From the NCBI GenBank assembly GCA_977017575.1, contig CDRNVI010000002.1:868001-932000 (forward strand): DNA of 64,000 bases, written 5' to 3'. Below are positions 5,842-20,274 of the stretch, in pieces. The position numbers were made by a program, and so were the translations under genes. The DNA is from Paramoeba atlantica. Taxonomy: Eukaryota; Protista; Discosea. Numbering within the stretch: position 1 is the stretch's first letter; every line of letters begins with the position of its first letter. The notes beneath the pieces are model-generated. The model did no database searches. It saw only the letters and a program-made list of their open reading frames with translations, and was not told the origin of the DNA.

Positions 5842-6193
5842 TGTTATGACTATTATAGTCTTAAGTCCTGTATATTACCACGTTGAGTCTGATGAAGCGT
5901 AGTATAAATATACATAATTCTGGTGTGCGTTTGGGCGCCTTTTTCTTAGTAAAACACGTAATTGAGTATTGGGACATTTCTTTGCCGCTTCCACGGGTGT
6001 ACCGAAGTGTTCAAACATTTGTAAAAATTAATTAAGCTATACATTTTAGAACACCCTTTCGGAATTCACACTCTTGGGATGCTGCTGAAGCAAACAAATT
6101 CCATTTATTTGCAATAAATCAACAAATTTGCAACGAATCAATAAATACCTTTTGATTATTCAGGTATTTTACAACGACTATGCACTTGAGCAA

Positions 6194-6771
6194 ATGCTTC
6201 CGACTATTTTATTTTTCAGTGTCGATGTCCCACTGCGAGCAAGTAGAGTGCGTGGCTCTGCCCTGCCCCAGGAATATATGCTGTCTCGATTCGTAAATAC
6301 TCTGCTTATTAAAGACAAGTCATGGACTGATAATACACCTGCTTGTGAATGGAAATTCGTCGAATGCGATATTGATAAGCATGTTACTTCGCTAAAGTGG
6401 CAAAGCAACATGTTTCAAGACTCTCTCGCTGATTCATTAACTATAAAGGGCGAACTGCAGTGGGTGTACACACCTCATACGTTGCTCTTCTTTAGAGCTT
6501 ATATGCAGGCTTTATTTGGCTCTCTACATCTCTCTTTACTGCCGCCTCGTTTAATAACATTTGACATCGCTTTGAATAGATGTAGTGGGCATTTAGATCT
6601 GACACATTTGCCCTGTTCATTGGTAACTTTGGATTTAAATTTCAATAAATTTGAAGGTGAAATCGATCTTTCGTGTCTTCCTGCGTCTTTAAAAACCCTG
6701 AACCTGTGTTCTAATGAACTTTATGGTAATGTAGATTTGACTAAAATTTCTAAGGACATAGAAAGTATAAA
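6194..6771 (+). pseudogene. LRR protein gene, 5' part, interrupted by retrotransposon insertion
   Basis: ALPQEY...ACEW.FVEC cap plus GxxDLxxLPxSLxxLxLxxN repeats shared with the LRR genes at 23.2 and 50.6 kb; the reading breaks off at DIESI. Confidence 0.8.
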
Positions 6772-6798
6772 TAAAGATACAGTTTCTGTACCTTGTTG
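6770..6798 (+). other. Spliced-leader (mini-exon) like sequence at the retrotransposon 5' end
   Basis: AATAAAGATACAGTTTCTGTACCTTGTTG; GATACAGTTTCTGTAC is identical to the T. cruzi SL core and the terminal TTG is at the same spacing; no GT donor follows. Confidence 0.8.
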
Positions 6799-9700
6799 AT
6801 TTGTACTAACTGTTATCCTCCCCTACTGGGGCATGGCACTTCCCCCCTCCACCTCTGCCCCCCAAGCGCAAGGCGACCTCCCTCGAGGATCTGCTGGCGC
6901 AAAATCATCGCGTAAGCACAGCTTCCACTTCACTCAGCAGCGCGCAATACCGATTAAAATCAGACACTCGACTTCCTCGCTTTGGATATACTTCTCCGAT
7001 ATTCACGCGGCGGCCTCCTTCCTTACTGAAAAGAAACACTTTAATACAGAAATCACAGCGGAGCTTTCCTTGGCACGCACTTTGGATACTGGAGCGAAGA
7101 GAACCGATGGTATTCTAATCGAGAAATGTACCTTACAAGAAGTGATGGACGAAGAAGCTTGTGAACACTTTGTGTTCAAAGAATCTGCGCCGCCCCACCG
7201 CATTTTTCGACACGCCAGCTGGACCGCGGCGCACGCAGACGAAGTCCTGAATCTCAGCCAACAATACTCTTGCCCTGGCACACTCGGTAGGGCGATTAAG
7301 AAGAAACTGGCTGGTCACGATATCCCAGGATTGGCATCCTTCGACATAACCCACGTATCGCAGAGGGAACAGACGTCCGACGAAATCCCTTGGGAAAATC
7401 CCAAGATCTCGTATGATGAGCCACTCGCAATTCGCGCGCCGAGGCAACCGAATGATTCTCGAGGAACACGGTCGTTACGTACGCAGCCGTGCGCGCACCG
7501 ATGCCTAAACAAACTAACATGTCTCCATCCATGCTGTAAAGTGGGCATTGAATCCGAACCCATTCCCGACCCTGCCTCCGATCCGAACGCGCGCCAGCTC
7601 GGTGAAGCAGGTTCCATGGTTGACGCTTCGCCACATTCAACAGCGTCCAGACGACCTGAGTCCACGCGTTCGCAGCCGTGCGCACACCGATGCCTAAGCA
7701 AACGAACATGTCTACATCCGTGCTGTAAAGTGGGCATTGAACCCGAGCCTATTACCGACCCTGCCTCCGATCTGAATGCTCGTCAGCTCGTTGAAGCGGC
7801 TCCTACTGCTCTAGTAGCAGTGCAGCAAACAGCCTCCAGACCTGGGTATACGCTTTCACAGCCCTGCGCGTATCGATGTCTAAACAAACTAACATGCCTT
7901 CACCCATGTTGCAAAATAGGCGGTGAATGTGATCCGGCCTCTCAAGCAGGCACGCACCGACCCACGGGAACGATTCAGAGTCCCCACACCGACTCGACAC
8001 AACTACGAGATGAGCCACACCAGACTATGTACAGCACAACAAGGCGGCCATGCAAGCATGTCTGTCGGGACAAACAGAATTGCAAACATGGATGTTGCAA
8101 AGTTGGCGTGCTGGTCGATAGTTCTACACCCACCGACCCCAGTAGACCTGGAATTCCACATAATGAAACCTATGTTGCCTCCACTCGTGATCTGCACGCG
8201 CAGCACATACAGCCAACATCTGCAAGGAAAATTTCTGACACATCTACGGTACCGGAGGGGGAAGAATCCTCGCACAGACCCTGCAAACACCTGTGCCACA
8301 ACAAGGAAGAATGTAAGCACAAGTGTTGTAAGGAAGGTGTCCAAAGCCCAGTTAAAGATACCCGATCGGGCTCGAGTCGCTGGAGCCTGCGCAATCTTCT
8401 TTCATGGGGCTTCACCACAGGGAGCACGCGTACCAACGAAAACACAGCCCCTGCACGCACAAGGGATGGCCATGCAACCGGATCCGCAGCGCAACGTTAC
8501 CCCGAGACGCACAGGAACATGCCACAGGACCAACAGCAAGCCGAAACGACCGCACATCACACACAGGCCCGAATAGATGTGATTGAAGAAACCGAGACAC
8601 AGGTGCAGGGTACAACACAGCAGGATTTACCACATCATGACACGCAACCAAATAGTATACCGAATGTACGCACGATTCTGCAATCACAACGGATGAGAAC
8701 GCGCAACGATCGTTCAGGAAGCCCAGAAACTGCGGAAGACTTGCTGAGTACCTTGCGTACGATTGAAGGAGGGCGAGTAATGGCTAGTCTTTCTCATGAG
8801 CAATGGCAACGCGCAATCAAGAAGTCGTTCGAACGATGTAAGAAATACCTTAAACCAGCTGCAACCCCAACTGAAGCACTGCGACATGCCGATTTGTTAA
8901 CTGCCTGCATAGCAGTCTCGGCTTATGAAATCGCGCGGGAGGTTGACCCAACGAAAGGATTCAAGCTACGTTCGACGACTGGCCACACCAAACGTGCTTC
9001 ACGACCTCTCAGCTACGATCGCTCAGCAAAGGAACTTTCTGGACATATCCGCCAATTAAAACGTACCCTCTCTTACACACACGGCCGCTCGGAAAGAGAT
9101 CGCCTGATACGCAACATAAAAGAAGCCACGAAAGCCCGCAACCTCTACACAGAAGAAGCAAATCTCCTGCGACGTGAAAGGGAGAAAAGATGGGTGACGG
9201 ACAGATTTCAACGGAACCCCTGGACGGCAGGAGGGGAATGCCTCGACAATAACGAGAAGATGCGAAAACAGCCAACGATTTTCCCGAATTGTCCACAGGC
9301 AGATATTGAAACGTTCTTCAAGGACACACTAAGCATTGGCAACGAAACCCACACTCTACCCCCCACTGATCTTCTTGGCGCTGGAAACGAAAGCGAAATG
9401 AAGTGGGAAGATATTGACGTGCAAACCATAGCCGCGGCTATCTCCTCCAAGCGACCGTCCGCTGCACCAGGTCCTGACACCATAAGTAACGCCTTCCTCC
9501 GACGCTGCACTGAGCTGTACCCCTTCATCGCCCAAGTATTCAACGACCTACTCAAACACTCCGTAGGTCCAACCCACTGGAAACAAGCGGTGACTCGACT
9601 CATCCACAAAGGGGGGGCTACGGATAAACTGTCGAACTGGCGCCCTATCAGCCTGACCAGCTGTCTGGGGAAGCTACTCCACTCAATCATAGGACACAAA

Positions 9701-11779
9701 CTTCTGAGTCACGCTGTCAGCACAGGGATCATCGACACGACGATACAAAAAGGCTTTCTCCCCAATGTCAATGGAACCATCGAACACACGCAAGCGCTTT
9801 GTGAACTGCTGGATTTTCAGAGGCAGCACAAACGGCAATACTGCTTGGGTCAATTCGACCTGAAAAACGCCTTTGGTTCTCTTCCACACTCGATCCTCTT
9901 CCAAGTATTACAATGGGCAAAGGTGTCGCCGATTATCATCGAATATGTTCACTCCCTCTATACCAGTGCTTCTCTCCGAGTCAAGTGTGCTGAGGGGTTG
10001 ACTAACCACATTCCCGTTGAACGAGGCGTTCTTCAAGGCGACACCCTATCTCCTGTGCTATTCAACCTTGCGATGGAGGTAGTTTTAAGGTACCTTCGAT
10101 CCAGCTTTCCAGGATATGGCATCACATGGGGCGGGCAAGAATCATTCCTTAAGGCGTTTGCGGACGACCTTGCCGTCATTACCAAATCACCCGAAGAAAT
10201 GCAGCATGTTACTAACGCCCTGGTAAAGGTGCTCGCCAGATTAGGCATGCGGCTAAATGTACAGAAATGTCGGCTTCAGTATATGGCTGTAGCGGATGGA
10301 GGATACAAAACCCACAGACCGCACATCCGTGCCGGCGGCGAAAGCATACCCCACGTTTGCGACAAAGGCAGTCAGTTTCTGGGCATGACGCTAGCGCCTG
10401 GAGCCCAACAAGGGAAAGTGTTGTTCAAGAGTCTCCGTACACAACTACGCCACTGGCTTACCAACGTATCTGAAAGTGCCATGGATACGCCCGCCCGCCT
10501 CTGGGTCTACAATAACGTCATTATTTCCCGTCTACGCTACGTTCTGACGGTAAATCCGGGAATCACACTGAATTTCATCCTGCGGCTGCAAAAGCTTGCG
10601 ACTACACACATTCGGAAATGGGTGAATATGGCCAAAACTGCAACCAGCGAACTTCTCTATTCTGAGCGGGGGTGGGCCTTAACTAGTTTCTCAAAGCTGT
10701 GGATACTCTGCACGAGTACACTGGTCGAGCAAATGCAGAAATCACGTGACCCGGCTGTGCAACAGGCTTTAAGACACCGCATCCGCAGGGAACTGCACAA
10801 GCGCTCAACGGGACACGTCCAACCAGTAGTTGAACTGTACGACCGACGAGAAGACCGTGTGGCGACACGGCGGTTCATTGAGAATGAATACGAGCGACAC
10901 CTTTCCGAATCCGTGCAACGACGGGCTCCCATAGCGGCACAGTGGTTCCGTATGGCCACTGAGGACGAACTTGCGAAAGACTTTGCTGCTGCGGTATGTA
11001 ACATCAACAGTGAGGCACTCTCCCGGTTTACTGCATCTGTGTTGACCCAAACACCACTACCTACTCGTTCAGCACTGCGTCGTTGGGGTCTAAGTACGCA
11101 CACGGACACAAAGTGTCCCATTTGCAATGAGGAGGTGCAGACAGTTCGACATGTCCTCACAGGGTGCAAGGTGGCCCTTGAACAGGGCCGCTACACGTTC
11201 CGCCATGATCTTATACTCCACGCTATCGCAGATGCCGTAAGAGCATCCCCAGAAACAGCGCAGTACCACTTTGATCTTTCTCTTTACCGAAACCCCCCAA
11301 CATGGCTAAGTCAACAGGACACGGCCCTTAGACCTGATGGGTGGATCAAGCTACATAATGGTACTGAGTTCATACTTGAGCTCACTTCTCCGTGGGAGGA
11401 AAACTTTTTATCCTCACATGAGCGGAAAGTGCGGAAGTACGGGAATCTGTTTCTCGAAAGGAAAATGACTAACCCGGCAACCTTTCTTCTTGTCATCGAA
11501 GTGGGGGCCAGAGGGAAGCTCAACTCCTCTACGCGAGCGCTCAACTCACTTTTCGGAGGTAACAAGGCCACCGCCTCGCAATGTCGACAGAAGCTTGTCA
11601 AAAGAGCAATACGAGGAAGTTTCGCGATTTTTCAAAACCGCGATAACCCGAGCTGGACGGAAGCCAGCATATAGCGATGATGAAAAGCTTAAGGGAAACC
11701 CGTTTTGTGCGGGGTTTATGCATGATCTACGTGTATTTCTCTTAGGTGACAATCTCTGCAGTCATACTGCATGATAAAC
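6772..11779 (+). mobile_element. Full-length non-LTR retrotransposon, RLE type (HERO/NeSL-like)
   Basis: Single 1613-aa ORF with RT and RLE; boundaries set by the two halves of the interrupted LRR gene; about 60-nt 5' and 105-nt 3' UTR. Confidence 0.9.
6833..11674 (+). CDS. Retrotransposon polyprotein: Cys/His finger array, reverse transcriptase, CCHC knuckle, restriction-like endonuclease
   Basis: RT motifs NWRPISL, QKGF, RGVLQGDTLSP.LF, FADD; CPICNEEVQTVRHVLTGC; RHDLIL; RPDG; ELTSPWEE..ERKVRKY; no stops or frameshifts. Confidence 0.95.
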   Translation: MALPPSTSAPQAQGDLPRGSAGAKSSRKHSFHFTQQRAIPIKIRHSTSSLWIYFSDIHAAASFLTEKKHFNTEITAELSLARTLDTGAKRTDGILIEKCTLQEVMDEEACEHFVFKESAPPHRIFRHASWTAAHADEVLNLSQQYSCPGTLGRAIKKKLAGHDIPGLASFDITHVSQREQTSDEIPWENPKISYDEPLAIRAPRQPNDSRGTRSLRTQPCAHRCLNKLTCLHPCCKVGIESEPIPDPASDPNARQLGEAGSMVDASPHSTASRRPESTRSQPCAHRCLSKRTCLHPCCKVGIEPEPITDPASDLNARQLVEAAPTALVAVQQTASRPGYTLSQPCAYRCLNKLTCLHPCCKIGGECDPASQAGTHRPTGTIQSPHTDSTQLRDEPHQTMYSTTRRPCKHVCRDKQNCKHGCCKVGVLVDSSTPTDPSRPGIPHNETYVASTRDLHAQHIQPTSARKISDTSTVPEGEESSHRPCKHLCHNKEECKHKCCKEGVQSPVKDTRSGSSRWSLRNLLSWGFTTGSTRTNENTAPARTRDGHATGSAAQRYPETHRNMPQDQQQAETTAHHTQARIDVIEETETQVQGTTQQDLPHHDTQPNSIPNVRTILQSQRMRTRNDRSGSPETAEDLLSTLRTIEGGRVMASLSHEQWQRAIKKSFERCKKYLKPAATPTEALRHADLLTACIAVSAYEIAREVDPTKGFKLRSTTGHTKRASRPLSYDRSAKELSGHIRQLKRTLSYTHGRSERDRLIRNIKEATKARNLYTEEANLLRREREKRWVTDRFQRNPWTAGGECLDNNEKMRKQPTIFPNCPQADIETFFKDTLSIGNETHTLPPTDLLGAGNESEMKWEDIDVQTIAAAISSKRPSAAPGPDTISNAFLRRCTELYPFIAQVFNDLLKHSVGPTHWKQAVTRLIHKGGATDKLSNWRPISLTSCLGKLLHSIIGHKLLSHAVSTGIIDTTIQKGFLPNVNGTIEHTQALCELLDFQRQHKRQYCLGQFDLKNAFGSLPHSILFQVLQWAKVSPIIIEYVHSLYTSASLRVKCAEGLTNHIPVERGVLQGDTLSPVLFNLAMEVVLRYLRSSFPGYGITWGGQESFLKAFADDLAVITKSPEEMQHVTNALVKVLARLGMRLNVQKCRLQYMAVADGGYKTHRPHIRAGGESIPHVCDKGSQFLGMTLAPGAQQGKVLFKSLRTQLRHWLTNVSESAMDTPARLWVYNNVIISRLRYVLTVNPGITLNFILRLQKLATTHIRKWVNMAKTATSELLYSERGWALTSFSKLWILCTSTLVEQMQKSRDPAVQQALRHRIRRELHKRSTGHVQPVVELYDRREDRVATRRFIENEYERHLSESVQRRAPIAAQWFRMATEDELAKDFAAAVCNINSEALSRFTASVLTQTPLPTRSALRRWGLSTHTDTKCPICNEEVQTVRHVLTGCKVALEQGRYTFRHDLILHAIADAVRASPETAQYHFDLSLYRNPPTWLSQQDTALRPDGWIKLHNGTEFILELTSPWEENFLSSHERKVRKYGNLFLERKMTNPATFLLVIEVGARGKLNSSTRALNSLFGGNKATASQCRQKLVKRAIRGSFAIFQNRDNPSWTEASI

Positions 11780-11780
11780 A

Positions 11781-11861
11781 AAACTTGGCAAAAATTACTT
11801 TTTCATACCCGAAACTATACCCGAAAAAGTGTTTTTCGGAATTCAAAAGAATAAACAATAG
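11781..11861 (+). pseudogene. LRR protein gene, 3' part (KLGKNYFFIPETIPEKVFFGIQKNKQ*)
   Basis: Manual translation; LGKNYF completes the LxxNxF repeat broken at 6771 and parallels LVENCF and LCENCF near the ends of the two intact paralogs. Confidence 0.75.
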
Positions 11862-12274
11862 TTTGAGAATATTACATCAAATCTACTGTACAGTACTTGG
11901 TGTCTATGCCCTGTAGTACTTGGGTGTACATGCTCTGTGTATTGGGGGATAATACAGTATGTATGAGCTGCACGGGGTTTATTACAAAAACAAATTCGTA
12001 AGATACTACTGAGCTCCAAGAATAACATTTCGATAGCATTCATTGGCTTGCATTCTTTATTCATATTTATTGCGGGTGGCGGGCATTAAAAAACAGACCT
12101 TTCTTTGTTTTTTGTTTTATTTAAAATCACTCATAATTTACATACTTGTTATGTATGTATGTACTTGTTATGAAAAGTTGTGAAAAGTTATGAAAAGGAG
12201 AGTACATTGTGCGTCTTTCGCATACAAAAAATGCTTTTAACTCTTATTTTTCCACTTTTTCGTTTCTAGTACAC

Positions 12275-16097: not shown

Positions 16098-17228
16098 ATG
16101 CAACGCACTTTGCTCCGTTTTCACGGGCTCCTTCAATTTCCCTGTGGCTCTGGTCACCTCACGATCGGTCGCGGAACTGAATTTATGGTCCCCAGCAACG
16201 ACATTTACCACGATCCCGTAGCGCTGCGTGAACGTCTCGACCTCGACGGCTTTCTATACTTTAAAGACATTCTTCCCCGTGACCACCTCACACGCTCCCT
16301 CCTCTCCCTACAAATCCAACTCCAACACCTTGGTATACTTCTCCCCAACAGTTTTGAATTTAATCCTCACTACCACAACCTTAAAACCAACCCACCCCAA
16401 ACAAACCCCCCAAACCACCCGCCCTCAGAAATCCAACCTCAATGCCACAACAACAACAACAATGATAACAACAACAATAACAACAACAACAATGATAACA
16501 ACAACAACAATTGCAATAACAACAATAGCATCAACAACAATAATAATAACCACAACAACAACAACAACAGCAACAATAATAATCATGACCACAACCCCCT
16601 CCCCCCACCCCCCCTCGACCTCCCCTCTCTCACCCACGGCCCCAAACTCCTCTCCATCGTCCGCCACGTCTTCGGCGCCCCCGTCCGCCCCTTCCCCGCC
16701 CCCACCGCCGCCCTCCTCGAGGTCGCCCCCCGCGCCGAGCCCCACACCTTCCACATGGACGCCGTCTACCTCACCCGCGGCACCCGCCTCGTGTTAACCG
16801 CCTGGCTCCCCCTCACCGACACCCCCCTCCGTCGCGGCCCCCTCGTGTGTGTGCGCTCCAGCAACTCCCACCCCAGCACCGAGAGACTGCGCCACACCTA
16901 CGGGCTCTACGACGCCCACAGCGGGGCCGTCGCCGGGGCCGGGGGGTACAGCGCGGACCCCCGGGAGGTGGAGGGGATGGGTCGGGGGTGCGTGACGGCC
17001 TCGATGAGGGCCGGGGACCTGGTGTTGTTCGGGGTCTACACCATGCACGGGTTTCTAACGAACCAGTGTGCCGGGGTGCGGGTCTCCGCGGAGTCGAAGT
17101 GGTTTCTGGAGGGGGATGGGGCGGGACCGGATGAGAGGTATTGCGGGCATAGGGTGGGGGGTGGGGGTGGGGGGGTGGGGAAGGTGATGAGTTTGGAGGA
17201 GGCGAAGAGGACGGTGTGGGGTTTGTGA
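16098..17228 (+). CDS. Phytanoyl-CoA dioxygenase (PhyH) family 2OG/Fe(II) oxygenase with poly-Asn insert
   Basis: DGFLYFKDIL, HMD (HxD), LTAWLPLTD..GPL, MRAGDLVLF...MHG. Confidence 0.8.
   Translation: MQRTLLRFHGLLQFPCGSGHLTIGRGTEFMVPSNDIYHDPVALRERLDLDGFLYFKDILPRDHLTRSLLSLQIQLQHLGILLPNSFEFNPHYHNLKTNPPQTNPPNHPPSEIQPQCHNNNNNDNNNNNNNNNDNNNNNCNNNNSINNNNNNHNNNNNSNNNNHDHNPLPPPPLDLPSLTHGPKLLSIVRHVFGAPVRPFPAPTAALLEVAPRAEPHTFHMDAVYLTRGTRLVLTAWLPLTDTPLRRGPLVCVRSSNSHPSTERLRHTYGLYDAHSGAVAGAGGYSADPREVEGMGRGCVTASMRAGDLVLFGVYTMHGFLTNQCAGVRVSAESKWFLEGDGAGPDERYCGHRVGGGGGGVGKVMSLEEAKRTVWGL
16449..16583 (+). repeat. (AAC/AAT)n coding microsatellite (poly-Asn)
   Basis: Runs of aac/aat codons seen directly. Confidence 0.9.
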
Positions 17229-19692: not shown

Positions 19693-20274
19693 TGAAATTC
19701 AACATGGGACGAGGTACGGCCGTATCCAAATGGTAGAATGCTTTTAAAAGTCAGATGCTGCGTTCTTTTTGAAATCACAAGTACACTCGGGAAACCGTAA
19801 AATTTAGTTCATAGTACCCCCCTCTAACAACTAATTATAAATTACCCTGTTGTCAGGATTTATAAATACTTCTTATTTATAAACAAAAATGAGTCTGCTC
19901 GAAATTTTTCTTGCTCCTCAAGCAAGAACTGGAAACCCCCCTAGTTTGTCAGTCTGTACGTAAGCGGTGATGCATTATTTATGGGTACCCCCTTTAGTGA
20001 CGAAATGTGATTCCTGGATGTCGGTTATGAACACCAAGTACAACTCCCGTCAATCATCCATGAGCACTCAAACAGTACAAAACTCTATGCTGTTACGGGG
20101 GAACTACGACAAACTCGGGTATCTTGACAATTTGGAACAGTTAGGATCAGCGGGAAATGGAGATTCGGGGTAACTTCTTTCAAGCTTCCGAATTACTTAA
20201 TGGGCTCCTGATGCGAGTCTACTTTTTTTCTGATACGTCATAAATTCATAACCCATTATAATATTGAGGTGGTG

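What the first reader, a model, noticed from the sequence alone, without database searches (positions are those of the whole stretch)
6770..11779. Intact RLE retrotransposon whose 5' end is a spliced-leader exon
Seen: exactly at the 5' insertion junction lies AATAAAGATACAGTTTCTGTACCTTGTTG (6770-6798), then 34 nt of UTR and the ATG of an uninterrupted 1613-aa ORF. Known: the T. cruzi SL is AACTAACGCTATTATTGATACAGTTTCTGTACTATATTG, so there is a 16-nt exact core match and a correctly spaced terminal TTG; the 29-nt piece corresponds to SL positions 11-39. No GT follows, so it is not an SL RNA gene. Inference A: the element retrotransposes through its own SL trans-spliced mRNA and copies the leader into DNA, which would be a life cycle tied to polycistronic transcription. 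Inference B: it is an SL-gene-targeting element (SLACS/CZAR/CRE insert at about nt 11-12 of the exon; NeSL-1 targets nematode SL1) co-transcribed with the exon and inserted here off-target. The RLE signature (RHD..PD..ELTSPWEE) looks HERO/NeSL-like, not CRE-like; I know of no such element described from kinetoplastids, but could not search.
Basis: partly seen in the sequence, partly recalled or inferred. Interest (0 to 1): 0.9.

Follow-up and report, generated by a model that had tools for sequence, protein, structure and literature searches.

The report
Retrotransposon headed by host spliced leader
A young, intact jumping gene of the R2 type sits in one copy of a leucine-rich-repeat gene of a kinetoplastid-like protist, and its DNA begins with most of the short leader that the cell splices onto its messenger RNAs. 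This shows it was copied back from leader-carrying RNA rather than aimed at leader genes.

Summary
Window 6772-11782 is a 5,011-nt non-LTR retrotransposon with one intact 1613-aa ORF (RT, CCHC, R2-type restriction-like endonuclease).

- **The leader piece.** It begins with nt 11/12-38 of the organism's own 38-nt spliced leader (SL), which I read from tandem SL RNA genes. The piece is 100% identical and is joined at the exact exon end to a 34-nt 5'UTR.
- **Origin of the piece.** A collinear 99% identical homologous contig lacks the insert, so the SL piece arrived with the element.
- **Inference B (SL-gene targeting) is not supported.** At least 36 of 40 SL genes are intact, none adjoins a 3' end of this family's type, and copies are dispersed. 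Three of six family copies sit at one phase of LRR repeats.
- **Inference A (copying of SL-carrying RNA) is largely supported.**
  - All about 23 full-length relatives start inside the SL.
  - The partner SINE shows graded SL remnants: 70 from nt 11, 11 from nt 9, 5 from nt 7, 2 from nt 3.
  - A sister LINE and a SINE carry "SL + relic SL" heads, made by re-trans-splicing at the CAG inside a DNA-encoded leader.
- **Still open.**
  - Why this machinery prefers a 5' end at nt 11/12.
  - How the single-SL junction is regenerated. No AG-preceded, SL-less source copy exists.
  - Which clade the element belongs to, CRE or NeSL/R2.

The scan had already noted SL-headed elements on other DNA of this genome. 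I found no published report of this.

The parts
6772..6798 (+). DNA copy of host spliced leader nt 12-38 (nt 11 if the A at 6771 is counted); first bases of the insert
   Evidence: Identical to the SL exon of the tandem SL RNA genes. Absent from the empty homologous site.
6799..6832 (+). 5'UTR: T-rich spacer ATTT, GTACTAAC (6803-6810, resembles the yeast branch-point consensus as I recall it), pyrimidine-rich tract, and AACTGTTATC (6808-6817) complementary to SL nt 16-24
   Evidence: The same layout is seen in sister subfamilies (L052, L058, L073-L075), three of which keep an AG just before the ATG.
6833..11674 (+). Single intact ORF, 1613 aa
   Evidence: In the 724-aa RT-endonuclease region, five further genomic copies are 99-100% identical, four of them without stops.
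7490..8329 (+). N-terminal Cys/His modules (CxHxCx5CxHxCC, four exact and one variant), partly as a 189-nt tandem repeat; presumed nucleic-acid-binding region
   Evidence: No Pfam family matched. The function is inferred.
9605..10387 (+). Reverse transcriptase domain (aa 925-1185; FADD at 10157-10168)
   Evidence: Pfam RVT_1, E 5e-31. Aligns to R2 proteins 9nl3/9dou at E 1e-29.
11114..11440 (+). CCHC zinc knuckle (11114-11167) and restriction-like endonuclease motifs RHD, RPD, ILELT, KVRKY
   Evidence: Residue-by-residue alignment to the R2Tg CCHC/RHN/KPD/VVDVT/KVRKY region. zf-RVT, E 1e-5, just under the Pfam cut-off. Positions.
11675..11782 (+). 3'UTR with terminal hairpin TGCAGT-CAT-ACTGCA (11757-11771), then TGATAAAC and a short A run
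   Evidence: The hairpin stem covaries among LINE and SINE subfamilies. The tail varies from A4 to A14 between copies.
6128..6771 (+). 5' part of the interrupted host LRR gene (same strand); its last repeat continues at 11783
   Evidence: Translation of the flanks, and the empty-site reading ..DIESIKLGKNYFFIPE...

Best explanation
This is a young, apparently intact member of a diverse superfamily of R2-type (restriction-like endonuclease) non-LTR retrotransposons in a kinetoplastid-like protist.

**Shown:**
- The element inserted, in sense orientation and without a target duplication, into the last repeat of an LRR gene on one of two homologous contigs.
- Its DNA starts with nt 11/12-38 of the host spliced leader, fused at the exact exon end to its 5'UTR.
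- The family does not sit in SL RNA genes.

**Inferred:**
- The template for reverse transcription was an element RNA carrying the host SL at its 5' end, acquired by SL trans-splicing of read-through transcripts from the surrounding polycistron.
- The element therefore needs no promoter of its own.
- Its endonuclease nicks the target, and cDNA synthesis is primed at the short A tail next to a conserved 3' hairpin. The same hairpin is shared with a roughly 0.6-kb non-coding SINE partner.
- The 5' junction is formed preferentially 10-11 nt short of the RNA's capped end.
- SL-headed DNA copies can themselves be transcribed, trans-spliced again and re-inserted.
For: 1. **The SL piece is part of the insert.** The empty site in C12 and the joined form in two runs both lack it.
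2. **The join is at the exon end.** It lies exactly at SL nt 38 and no intron bases follow. This holds in every LINE subfamily head I could read, although the spacer before GTACTAAC varies from 4 to 16 nt.
3. **No SL-less relatives.** All about 23 homologous full-length 5' ends in the genome begin within the SL piece (query positions 1-12 of 329).
4. **Graded remnants in the partner SINE.** It shares the head and the covarying 3' hairpin. Exact heads number 70 from nt 11, 11 from nt 9 (about 3 expected by chance), 5 from nt 7, and 2 from nt 3. Templates therefore carried leader sequence upstream of nt 11.
5. **Relic tandems.** SL|TTTCTGTACCTTG occurs 13 times and SL|ATACAG twice, against 0 for controls. 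These are the products expected from re-trans-splicing at the two AGs inside a DNA-encoded SL. One is the head of a sister LINE (C34:177949-177992) and one is a SINE head (C37).
6. **No SL-gene targeting.** There are 40 SL genes, of which 36 have an intact exon, and none has a CATGA-type 3' end in front of the exon remainder.
7. **Orientation.** The element, its host gene and all large ORFs of the window lie on the + strand. In L045, L055 and the SINE in L022 the flanking LRR frames also read in the element's orientation.
8. **Enzyme.** Pfam RVT_1, and an end-to-end alignment to R2Tg that includes the CCHC and PD-(D/E)xK motifs.
Against: - **No RNA data.** No run holding the stretch is on record as RNA. 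One run of the same species label was guessed to be RNA, and its contigs touched only the SL stretch. Trans-splicing of this element's RNA is therefore inferred from DNA only.
- **No way to re-splice at the observed junction.** In a DNA copy the junction is preceded by TTG, not AG. This family's UTR has no AG between the SL piece and the ATG.
- **No SL-less source copy.** The genome holds no AG|ATTTGTACTAACTG.
- **Relic-tandem heads are rare.** They make up 15 of about 895 SL sites, and only 2 were shown to lie in the endonuclease LINE/SINE system.
- **The 5' end is not random.** It clusters at nt 11/12 in about 16 of 24 LINE/SINE heads that I read, whereas other retroelement classes keep nt 1-5. 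An inherited SL-derived head whose RNA starts near nt 11 would also explain this.
- **The SL-gene variant test gave nothing.** The A17G variant, present in 2 of 40 genes, appears in only 1 head genome-wide.
Confidence: 0.72

Rival explanations
1. **Inherited head.** The SL piece was captured once by the ancestor of the LINE/SINE superfamily. It is now a fixed 5' module (internal promoter, processing signal or protein-binding hairpin). RNAs start or are cut at nt 11/12, and the piece is copied vertically without fresh trans-splicing.
For: - A sharp mode of 5' ends at nt 11/12 with blunt, homology-free joins.
- No SL-less source copy and no AG at the junction.
- In all six LINE subfamily heads the UTR pairs with the SL more stably than shuffled UTRs do (z -1.8 to -2.5). 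Heads of other element classes scatter around z 0.
- The GTAC after the SL can pair with the SL's GTACC, and the real SL RNA gene has the matching GTACC..GGTAT (sequence).
- Internal promoters that start at +1 are the rule for trypanosomatid L1Tc/ingi (Pr77; PMC1874656).
Against: - SINE heads extend to nt 9, 7 and 3 far more often than chance allows.
- The relic-tandem LINE and SINE heads show that element transcripts do get trans-spliced.
- 28 of 28 identity to the host SL in subfamilies whose RT-endonuclease regions are only 63-82% identical (50-54% in the most distant subfamilies, whose heads I could not read) would require selection on every base.
- One family's UTR carries a 14-nt perfect complement to SL nt 6-19, which reaches beyond an nt-11 start.
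Confidence: 0.2
2. **SL-gene-targeting element** (CRE/SLACS/CZAR-like, reader's inference B). It was co-transcribed with exon sequence and landed here off-target. The nt 11/12 boundary would echo the CRE-clade insertion point as I recall it.
For: - The paper I read (PMC12278014) says only that these elements insert at one fixed relative position in SL genes.
- CRE is the only endonuclease-of-this-type clade reported from kinetoplastids (PMC12278014).
- Several sister LINE 3' ends lie directly in front of another element's SL head.
Against: - The empty site contains no SL.
- 36 of 40 SL genes are intact, and none has this family's 3' end upstream.
- The SL piece lies 5' of the element and ends at the exon boundary, without intron. 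A target-derived flank would not look like this.
- Head-to-tail joins are equally explained by template jumping at the shared GATAA.
Confidence: 0.03
3. **Promoter-driven chimeric source copies.** Recombination between an SL-headed copy and a real SL RNA gene puts the element body directly behind the SL promoter and exon. Full-SL RNA with the same junction is then transcribed, not spliced.
For: One locus, C41:280602-280877, has 238 nt of SL-gene upstream sequence plus the complete exon. Homology stops exactly at exon nt 38 and no intron follows. This would solve the missing-acceptor problem.
Against: - What follows the exon at C41 could not be read.
- That locus is not among the hits to this family's 5' 330 nt, and it does not start with GTA as the SINE does.
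- It is a single locus.
Confidence: 0.05

Closest known systems
CRE clade (CRE1/CRE2, SLACS, CZAR) of trypanosomatids
   Same: - Single-ORF non-LTR element with RT and a C-terminal restriction-like endonuclease.
- Internal repeats, zinc-finger-like motifs and an A tail.
- A euglenozoan host and an intimate link with the spliced leader (description in PMC12278014).
   Different: CRE elements sit inside SL RNA genes at one fixed exon position. This family is dispersed, leaves the SL genes intact, and carries SL nt 11/12-38 as its own 5' end, joined at the exon end. Phylogenetic membership was not testable here.
R2 elements (R2Bm, R2Tg)
   Same: The best solved-structure match spans RT, linker, CCHC and endonuclease (E 1e-29). 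The nearest ESM Atlas clusters are annotated as type-2 retrotransposable element protein. As I recall for R2, there is no apurinic/apyrimidinic-type endonuclease, insertions lack clean duplications, and the RT is prone to template jumps.
   Different: There is no 28S rDNA target. No N-terminal zinc-finger or Myb domain was detected. No HDV-like ribozyme was found at the 5' end. The 5' end is a host SL.
NeSL-1 / Utopia (NeSL clade)
   Same: Elements with this type of endonuclease and N-terminal zinc fingers. NeSL-1 is tied to nematode SL1 genes (PMC4640811).
   Different: NeSL targets SL exons as DNA, and nematode NeSL families carry a Ulp1-type protease. Here there is no protease domain, the modules are not C2H2, and there is no SL-gene targeting.
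Relict spliced leaders in dinoflagellate retrogenes (mRNA recycling)
   Same: The SL is written into DNA at the 5' end of retroposed sequences (PMC5585692, PMC12014239). Tandem relics cut at an internal AG after re-splicing, as I recall for dinoflagellates, are seen here.
   Different: There the cargo is host genes. Here the SL heads autonomous LINEs and their SINE as a constant family feature, in a kinetoplastid-like lineage, with a preferred nt 11/12 start.
L1Tc/ingi with the Pr77 5' module
   Same: A trypanosomatid LINE/SINE system whose members share a short 5' module that defines the RNA 5' end (PMC1874656, PMC3185411).
   Different: Pr77 is an internal promoter and ribozyme that gives unspliced RNA, and those elements use an apurinic/apyrimidinic-type endonuclease. 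Here the shared 5' module is the host SL itself.

Membership tests
Non-LTR retrotransposon with restriction-like endonuclease (R2/CRE/NeSL supergroup) | Reverse transcriptase domain in a single long ORF | tested here: met
   Pfam RVT_1, E 5e-31, aa 925-1185. ORF of 1613 aa without stops.
Non-LTR retrotransposon with restriction-like endonuclease (R2/CRE/NeSL supergroup) | C-terminal CCHC motif followed by a PD-(D/E)xK endonuclease, and no apurinic/apyrimidinic-type endonuclease | tested here: met
   CPIC..H..C, RHD, RPD, ILELT and KVRKY align with R2Tg CRHC..H..C, RHN, KPD, VVDVT and KVRKY. No Exo_endo_phos hit.
Non-LTR retrotransposon with restriction-like endonuclease (R2/CRE/NeSL supergroup) | Insertion by target-primed reverse transcription: defined 3' end with tail, variable 5' ends, no LTRs | tested here: met
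   All copies share the 3' end up to window 11783, followed by tails of A4-A14. 5' ends vary. The empty site shows a simple 5,011-nt insertion.
CRE clade (SLACS/CZAR/CRE1/CRE2) | Insertion at a fixed position inside SL RNA gene exons | tested here: not met
   The target is an LRR gene and the empty site has no SL. 36 of 40 SL genes are intact and none is preceded by this family's 3' end.
CRE clade (SLACS/CZAR/CRE1/CRE2) | RT groups with CRE references in a phylogeny | not testable with these tools
   No named CRE, NeSL, HERO or R4 sequences were returned by any search.
NeSL/Utopia | N-terminal C2H2 zinc fingers and, in nematode NeSL, a Ulp1-like protease; SL or U2 gene target (PMC4640811) | tested here: not met
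   No Pfam hit in aa 1-880. The modules are CxHxCx5CxHxCC. The target is not an SL or U2 gene.
R2 | 28S rDNA target and a 5' HDV-like ribozyme | tested here: not met
   The target is an LRR gene. Rfam found nothing in 6500-12100 at E up to 1. A divergent ribozyme cannot be excluded.
Retrocopies of SL trans-spliced RNA (dinoflagellate-type relict SL) | DNA-encoded SL at the 5' end, ending at the exon boundary and outside SL genes | tested here: met
Retrocopies of SL trans-spliced RNA (dinoflagellate-type relict SL) | Tandem relic SLs truncated at an internal AG (evidence of repeated cycles) | tested here: inconclusive
   Absent from this copy. Present in 15 loci genome-wide, including a sister LINE head and a SINE head.
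LINE/SINE partnership | A non-coding element sharing the LINE's 3' recognition structure | tested here: met
   The roughly 0.6-kb SINE ends in TCTCTGC-hairpin-ATGA plus an A-rich tail, and the stem covaries with the LINE subfamilies. It also shares the SL head plus GTAC.

The most novel reading that the evidence does not exclude
The SL piece, the branch-point-like GTACTAAC, the pyrimidine tract and the SL-complementary stretch together form a dedicated 5' cassette. It would let a promoter-less LINE and its SINE live off polycistronic transcription and trans-splicing wherever they land. The fixed nt 11/12 start would then reflect a defined rule of 5' end formation for this enzyme class. One possibility is that the capped first 10 or so nucleotides of the template are kept as a primer or are protected, and so are lost from the DNA copy. 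Both would be new for retrotransposons with restriction-like endonucleases.
Probability: 0.25. Interest if true: 0.85.

Novelty: new variant of a known kind. Interest (0 to 1): 0.68.

Why it matters
Mobile elements in organisms that transcribe genes as long polycistrons face an unusual problem. There are almost no gene promoters to borrow, and every translatable RNA needs the spliced leader.

The known kinetoplastid answers are an internal promoter (Pr77 of L1Tc/ingi) or insertion into the leader genes themselves (the CRE clade). This family suggests a third answer: ride read-through transcription, take the leader by trans-splicing, and write it back into DNA.

- It gives a natural tag for counting rounds of retrotransposition, through the relic leaders.
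- It provides a LINE/SINE pair for studying how R2-type enzymes finish the 5' end of an insertion.
- It is a second, independent lineage, after dinoflagellates, in which spliced leaders are recycled into the genome.

Tried and rejected
1. **Fetching more genomic copies.** After that I worked from coordinates, counts and four loci of an ENA assembly. I did not use gapped patterns to read the unread C41 locus.
2. **RNA evidence.** No run holding the stretch is on record as RNA. One run of the same species label was guessed to be RNA, and its contigs touched only the SL stretch. This says nothing about expression.
3. **Rfam.** A scan of 6500-12100 at E up to 1 found nothing, so no known ribozyme.
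4. **SL-gene variant as a tracer of renewal.** The A17G variant occurs in 2 of 40 genes but in only 1 head genome-wide, against 2 for a control variant. Uninformative.
5. **Search for an SL-less source copy.** AG|ATTTGTACTAACTG has 0 matches.
6. **Insertion into SL genes.** CATGA within 30 nt upstream of the exon 3' part plus intron has 0 matches. This test does not cover 3' ends of the TATGAT type. Four SL genes without a full exon proved to be promoter-less SL RNA retro-pseudogenes.
7. **Microhomology at the 5' junction.** The flanks before nt 11/12 show no consistent match to SL nt 5-10. Rejected as the cause of the boundary.
8. **Trimming of an unpaired cDNA flap at the SL/anti-SL stem.** The predicted boundaries do not fit two families. 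Rejected.
9. **Organism identification.** A window helicase found only an identical unnamed ENA protein, and cluster look-ups gave no names.
10. **Literature.** The SL sequence itself is in no paper. Searches for SL-headed mobile elements found only dinoflagellate retrogenes and the known kinetoplastid clades.


Full report
**1. What is in the sequence**

A 34-nt UTR follows, then an uninterrupted ORF at 6833-11674 (1613 aa). The region is about 52% G+C in a window averaging about 44%, with immediate flanks near 40%.

- Pfam finds RVT_1 (E 5e-31) and zf-RVT (E 1e-5, just under the Pfam cut-off).
- The last 724 aa align end to end with the vertebrate R2 protein R2Tg (9dou, 9nl3; E about 1e-29). 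The alignment includes CCHC, RHD/RHN, RPD/KPD, ELT/DVT and KVRKY.
- The nearest ESM Atlas clusters are R2-type.
- The N-terminal 880 aa match no Pfam family. They hold five Cys/His modules, partly as a 189-nt tandem repeat.
- The 3'UTR ends in a hairpin (11757-11771), then TGATAAAC and a few A.

**2. The organism's real spliced leader**

The core GATACAGTTTCTGTAC occurs about 895 times in the 45.7-Mb assembly, against 1 for the reversed control.

Forty sites continue with GTATGAGAAGC. They lie in tandem arrays on C97, C107, C74, C11, C24 and C3, and 36 of them have an intact exon. These are the SL RNA genes, and they define a 38-nt SL: AACTTTAACGATAAAGATACAGTTTCTGTACCTTGTTG. The window piece is therefore SL nt 11 or 12 to 38 with no mismatch, and base 6770 is flank. 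I found this SL sequence in no paper.

**3. The SL piece belongs to the insert**

- Contig C12 matches the window up to 6771 and again from 11780, with a 3-nt AAA overlap.
- C12 stays collinear at 99% for another 7.8 kb.
- Contigs from two sequencing runs show the same joint, skipping 5,011 nt.

The element is thus a simple 5,011-nt insertion without target duplication. It is present on one of two homologous contigs (a second haplotype or a large recent duplicate).

It interrupts, in sense orientation, the last repeat of an LRR gene. The empty site reads ..DIESIKLGKNYFFIPE... All large ORFs of the window lie on the same strand.

**4. The family**

- In the RT-endonuclease region, five further genomic copies are 99-100% identical to the window's, four of them without stops. 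Further subfamilies stand at about 82, 68, 64, 54 and 50%.
- All copies share the 3' end up to window 11783, followed by tails of A4 to A14.
- Every homologous full-length 5' end found (about 23) begins inside the SL piece. None lacks it.
- A roughly 0.6-kb non-coding element has the same head, with the SL followed directly by GTAC. It accounts for about 200 of the 237 sites where the SL is followed by GTA (40 of those are the SL genes).
- That element also shares the 3' structure TCTCTGC-hairpin-ATGA. The stem covaries between LINE and SINE subfamilies: AGT/ACT, ACT/AGT, AGG/CCT, CGC/GCG. It is a SINE partner.

**5. Where copies land**

Of six family copies with readable 3' flanks, three continue with (K)-L/I-x-x-N-x-F-x-G of an LRR repeat in the element's orientation: the window, L045 and L055. 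One SINE (L022) sits at the same repeat phase. Other copies lie in (GT)n, (TA)n or unrelated DNA.

**6. SL genes are not the target**

- No SL gene has a CATGA-type 3' end within 30 nt upstream of the exon's 3' part.
- The four SL-GTATGAG sites without a full exon are promoter-less copies of the SL RNA itself. They run from SL nt 3-5 to intron nt 67.

Inference B is therefore not supported.

**7. Evidence that the template carried a real leader**

*(a) The junction.* It lies exactly at exon nt 38 in all heads. The T-rich spacer before GTAC or GTACTAAC differs between groups: 0 nt in the SINE, and 4, 7, 15 or 16 nt in the LINE subfamilies.

*(b) Graded remnants.* Among exact SINE heads, 70 contain nt 11-38, 11 extend to nt 9, 5 to nt 7 and 2 to nt 3. 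Base composition predicts about 3, 0.3 and effectively 0. Templates therefore held leader sequence upstream of nt 11.

*(c) Relic tandems.* Thirteen dispersed loci read SL|TTTCTGTACCTTG and two read SL|ATACAG. These are the products expected if a DNA-encoded SL is transcribed and a new SL is spliced onto the AG at its nt 21-22 or nt 15-16.
- One is the head of a sister LINE: C34, SL + relic + AATTATTTTCAATTTTGTAC.
- One is a SINE head on C37.

This is the same signature I recall for dinoflagellate mRNA recycling.

*(d) Other retroelement classes.* They carry the SL from nt 1-5, often right behind the poly(A) of an upstream element, with variable bases at nt 1-2. That variability would fit misreading next to a modified cap, which is my own suggestion and is untested.

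**8. What remains unexplained**

*The nt 11/12 mode.* In about 16 of 24 LINE/SINE heads the first SL base is nt 11 or 12. The range is 9-20, and the joins are blunt with no homology to the flank. Head-to-tail fusions also occur at this place. In two cases an upstream ..ATGATAA 3' end is fused to the SL at the shared GATAA.

*How the single-SL junction is regenerated.* In DNA the junction is preceded by TTG. This family has no AG between the SL and the ATG. No AG|ATTTGTACTAACTG exists in the genome.

*Structure of the UTR.*
- GTACTAAC resembles the yeast branch-point consensus as I recall it. A pyrimidine tract follows.
- Three sister subfamilies have an AG immediately before the ATG (L052, L058, L075).
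- A stretch complementary to SL nt 13-24 is present. Duplex energies against shuffled UTRs give z of -1.8 to -2.5 in all six LINE subfamilies, and about 0 for heads of other element classes. The subfamilies are related, so this counts as one conserved feature, not six tests.
- The SINE has GTAC-pyrimidines-AG in 14-17 nt.

*A possible source-copy form.* One locus, C41:280602-280877, joins 238 nt of SL-gene upstream sequence and the whole exon to something that is not the intron. Such chimeras would yield full-SL RNA without splicing. I could not read what follows.

**9. Comparison with what is known**

- Four TE clades are reported from kinetoplastids: INGI, CRE, VIPER and TATE. CRE elements insert into SL genes (PMC12278014).
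- NeSL and Utopia have C2H2 fingers, and nematode NeSL families also carry a protease (PMC4640811).
- Pr77 gives L1Tc an internal promoter and a ribozyme (PMC1874656, PMC3185411).
- SL relics are described for dinoflagellate retrogenes (PMC5585692, PMC12014239).

I found no report of mobile elements whose family-wide 5' end is the host SL. Clade membership (CRE versus R2/NeSL) could not be tested, because no named references were reachable.

**10. Verdict**

Inference A is largely right, inference B is wrong here, and the clade claim stays open.

The scan had already noted SL-headed elements on other DNA of this genome. New in this report:
- the empty-site proof for this copy;
- the SL-gene census;
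- the graded-remnant counts;
- the relic-tandem heads inside the endonuclease LINE/SINE system;
- the nt 11/12 rule specific to this enzyme class;
- the C41 chimera.

Noticed in passing
G000:C41:280602-280877 (not in the window): A solitary locus with 238 nt of SL-gene upstream sequence plus the complete SL exon. Homology to SL genes stops exactly at exon nt 38 and no intron follows. It may be an SL promoter driving something else. The downstream sequence is unread.
   Followed up: partly
G000:C83:132963-133065, C6:27023-27125, C87:74326-74426, C87:106884-106984: Promoter-less copies of the SL RNA itself, running from SL nt 3-5 to intron nt 67. Two of them read AGCTTT at the start. They look like retro-pseudogenes of the SL RNA.
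   Followed up: partly
L005-L021, L024-L027 (G000:C1 and C2 loci): Other retroelement families carry the SL from nt 1-5, often directly after the poly(A) tail of an upstream element (head-to-tail). Bases at SL nt 1-2 vary (AA, AT, GA, TC). Some have short duplicated SL ends such as TTG|TACCTTGTTG.
   Followed up: partly
L061:633-700 and L073:9256-9190 (minus strand): An element with a 208-aa ORF. Its head is SL from nt 11 (with two A missing), and its 5'UTR holds a perfect 14-nt complement of SL nt 6-19. A LINE of the 68% subfamily lies tail-on against it.
   Followed up: no
L028-L030 (G000:C2:553054-553097): Two SL copies lie head to head as an inverted repeat that shares the SL 5' part.
   Followed up: no
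L001-L004 (G000:C1:9759-25052): A tandem array with a 5,093-bp period. Each unit starts with a near-complete SL that is flanked on both sides by the same 35-nt sequence.
   Followed up: no
G000:C44:23231-39672: Four tandem units, 5,370 bp apart, share the last 331 nt of this family at 98%. They did not appear among hits to its 5' 330 nt.
   Followed up: no
window 6799 joined to 10729 in contigs of run X1: A deletion derivative in which SL plus A is joined to the element's position 10729. There is no AG at the joint, so it is probably a template-switch deletion.
   Followed up: partly
window 16447-16583: A stretch of about 135 nt inside the G+C-rich PhyH-like ORF (16098-17228). It matches well over a hundred places at 72-83%, many of them in tandem on C149, C177, C137 and C144.
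   Followed up: no
window 19815-19907: A 93-nt repeat, 94-98% identical at five other loci. Collinearity with contig C12 ends at its 3' edge, so another structural difference between the two homologous contigs starts here.
   Followed up: no
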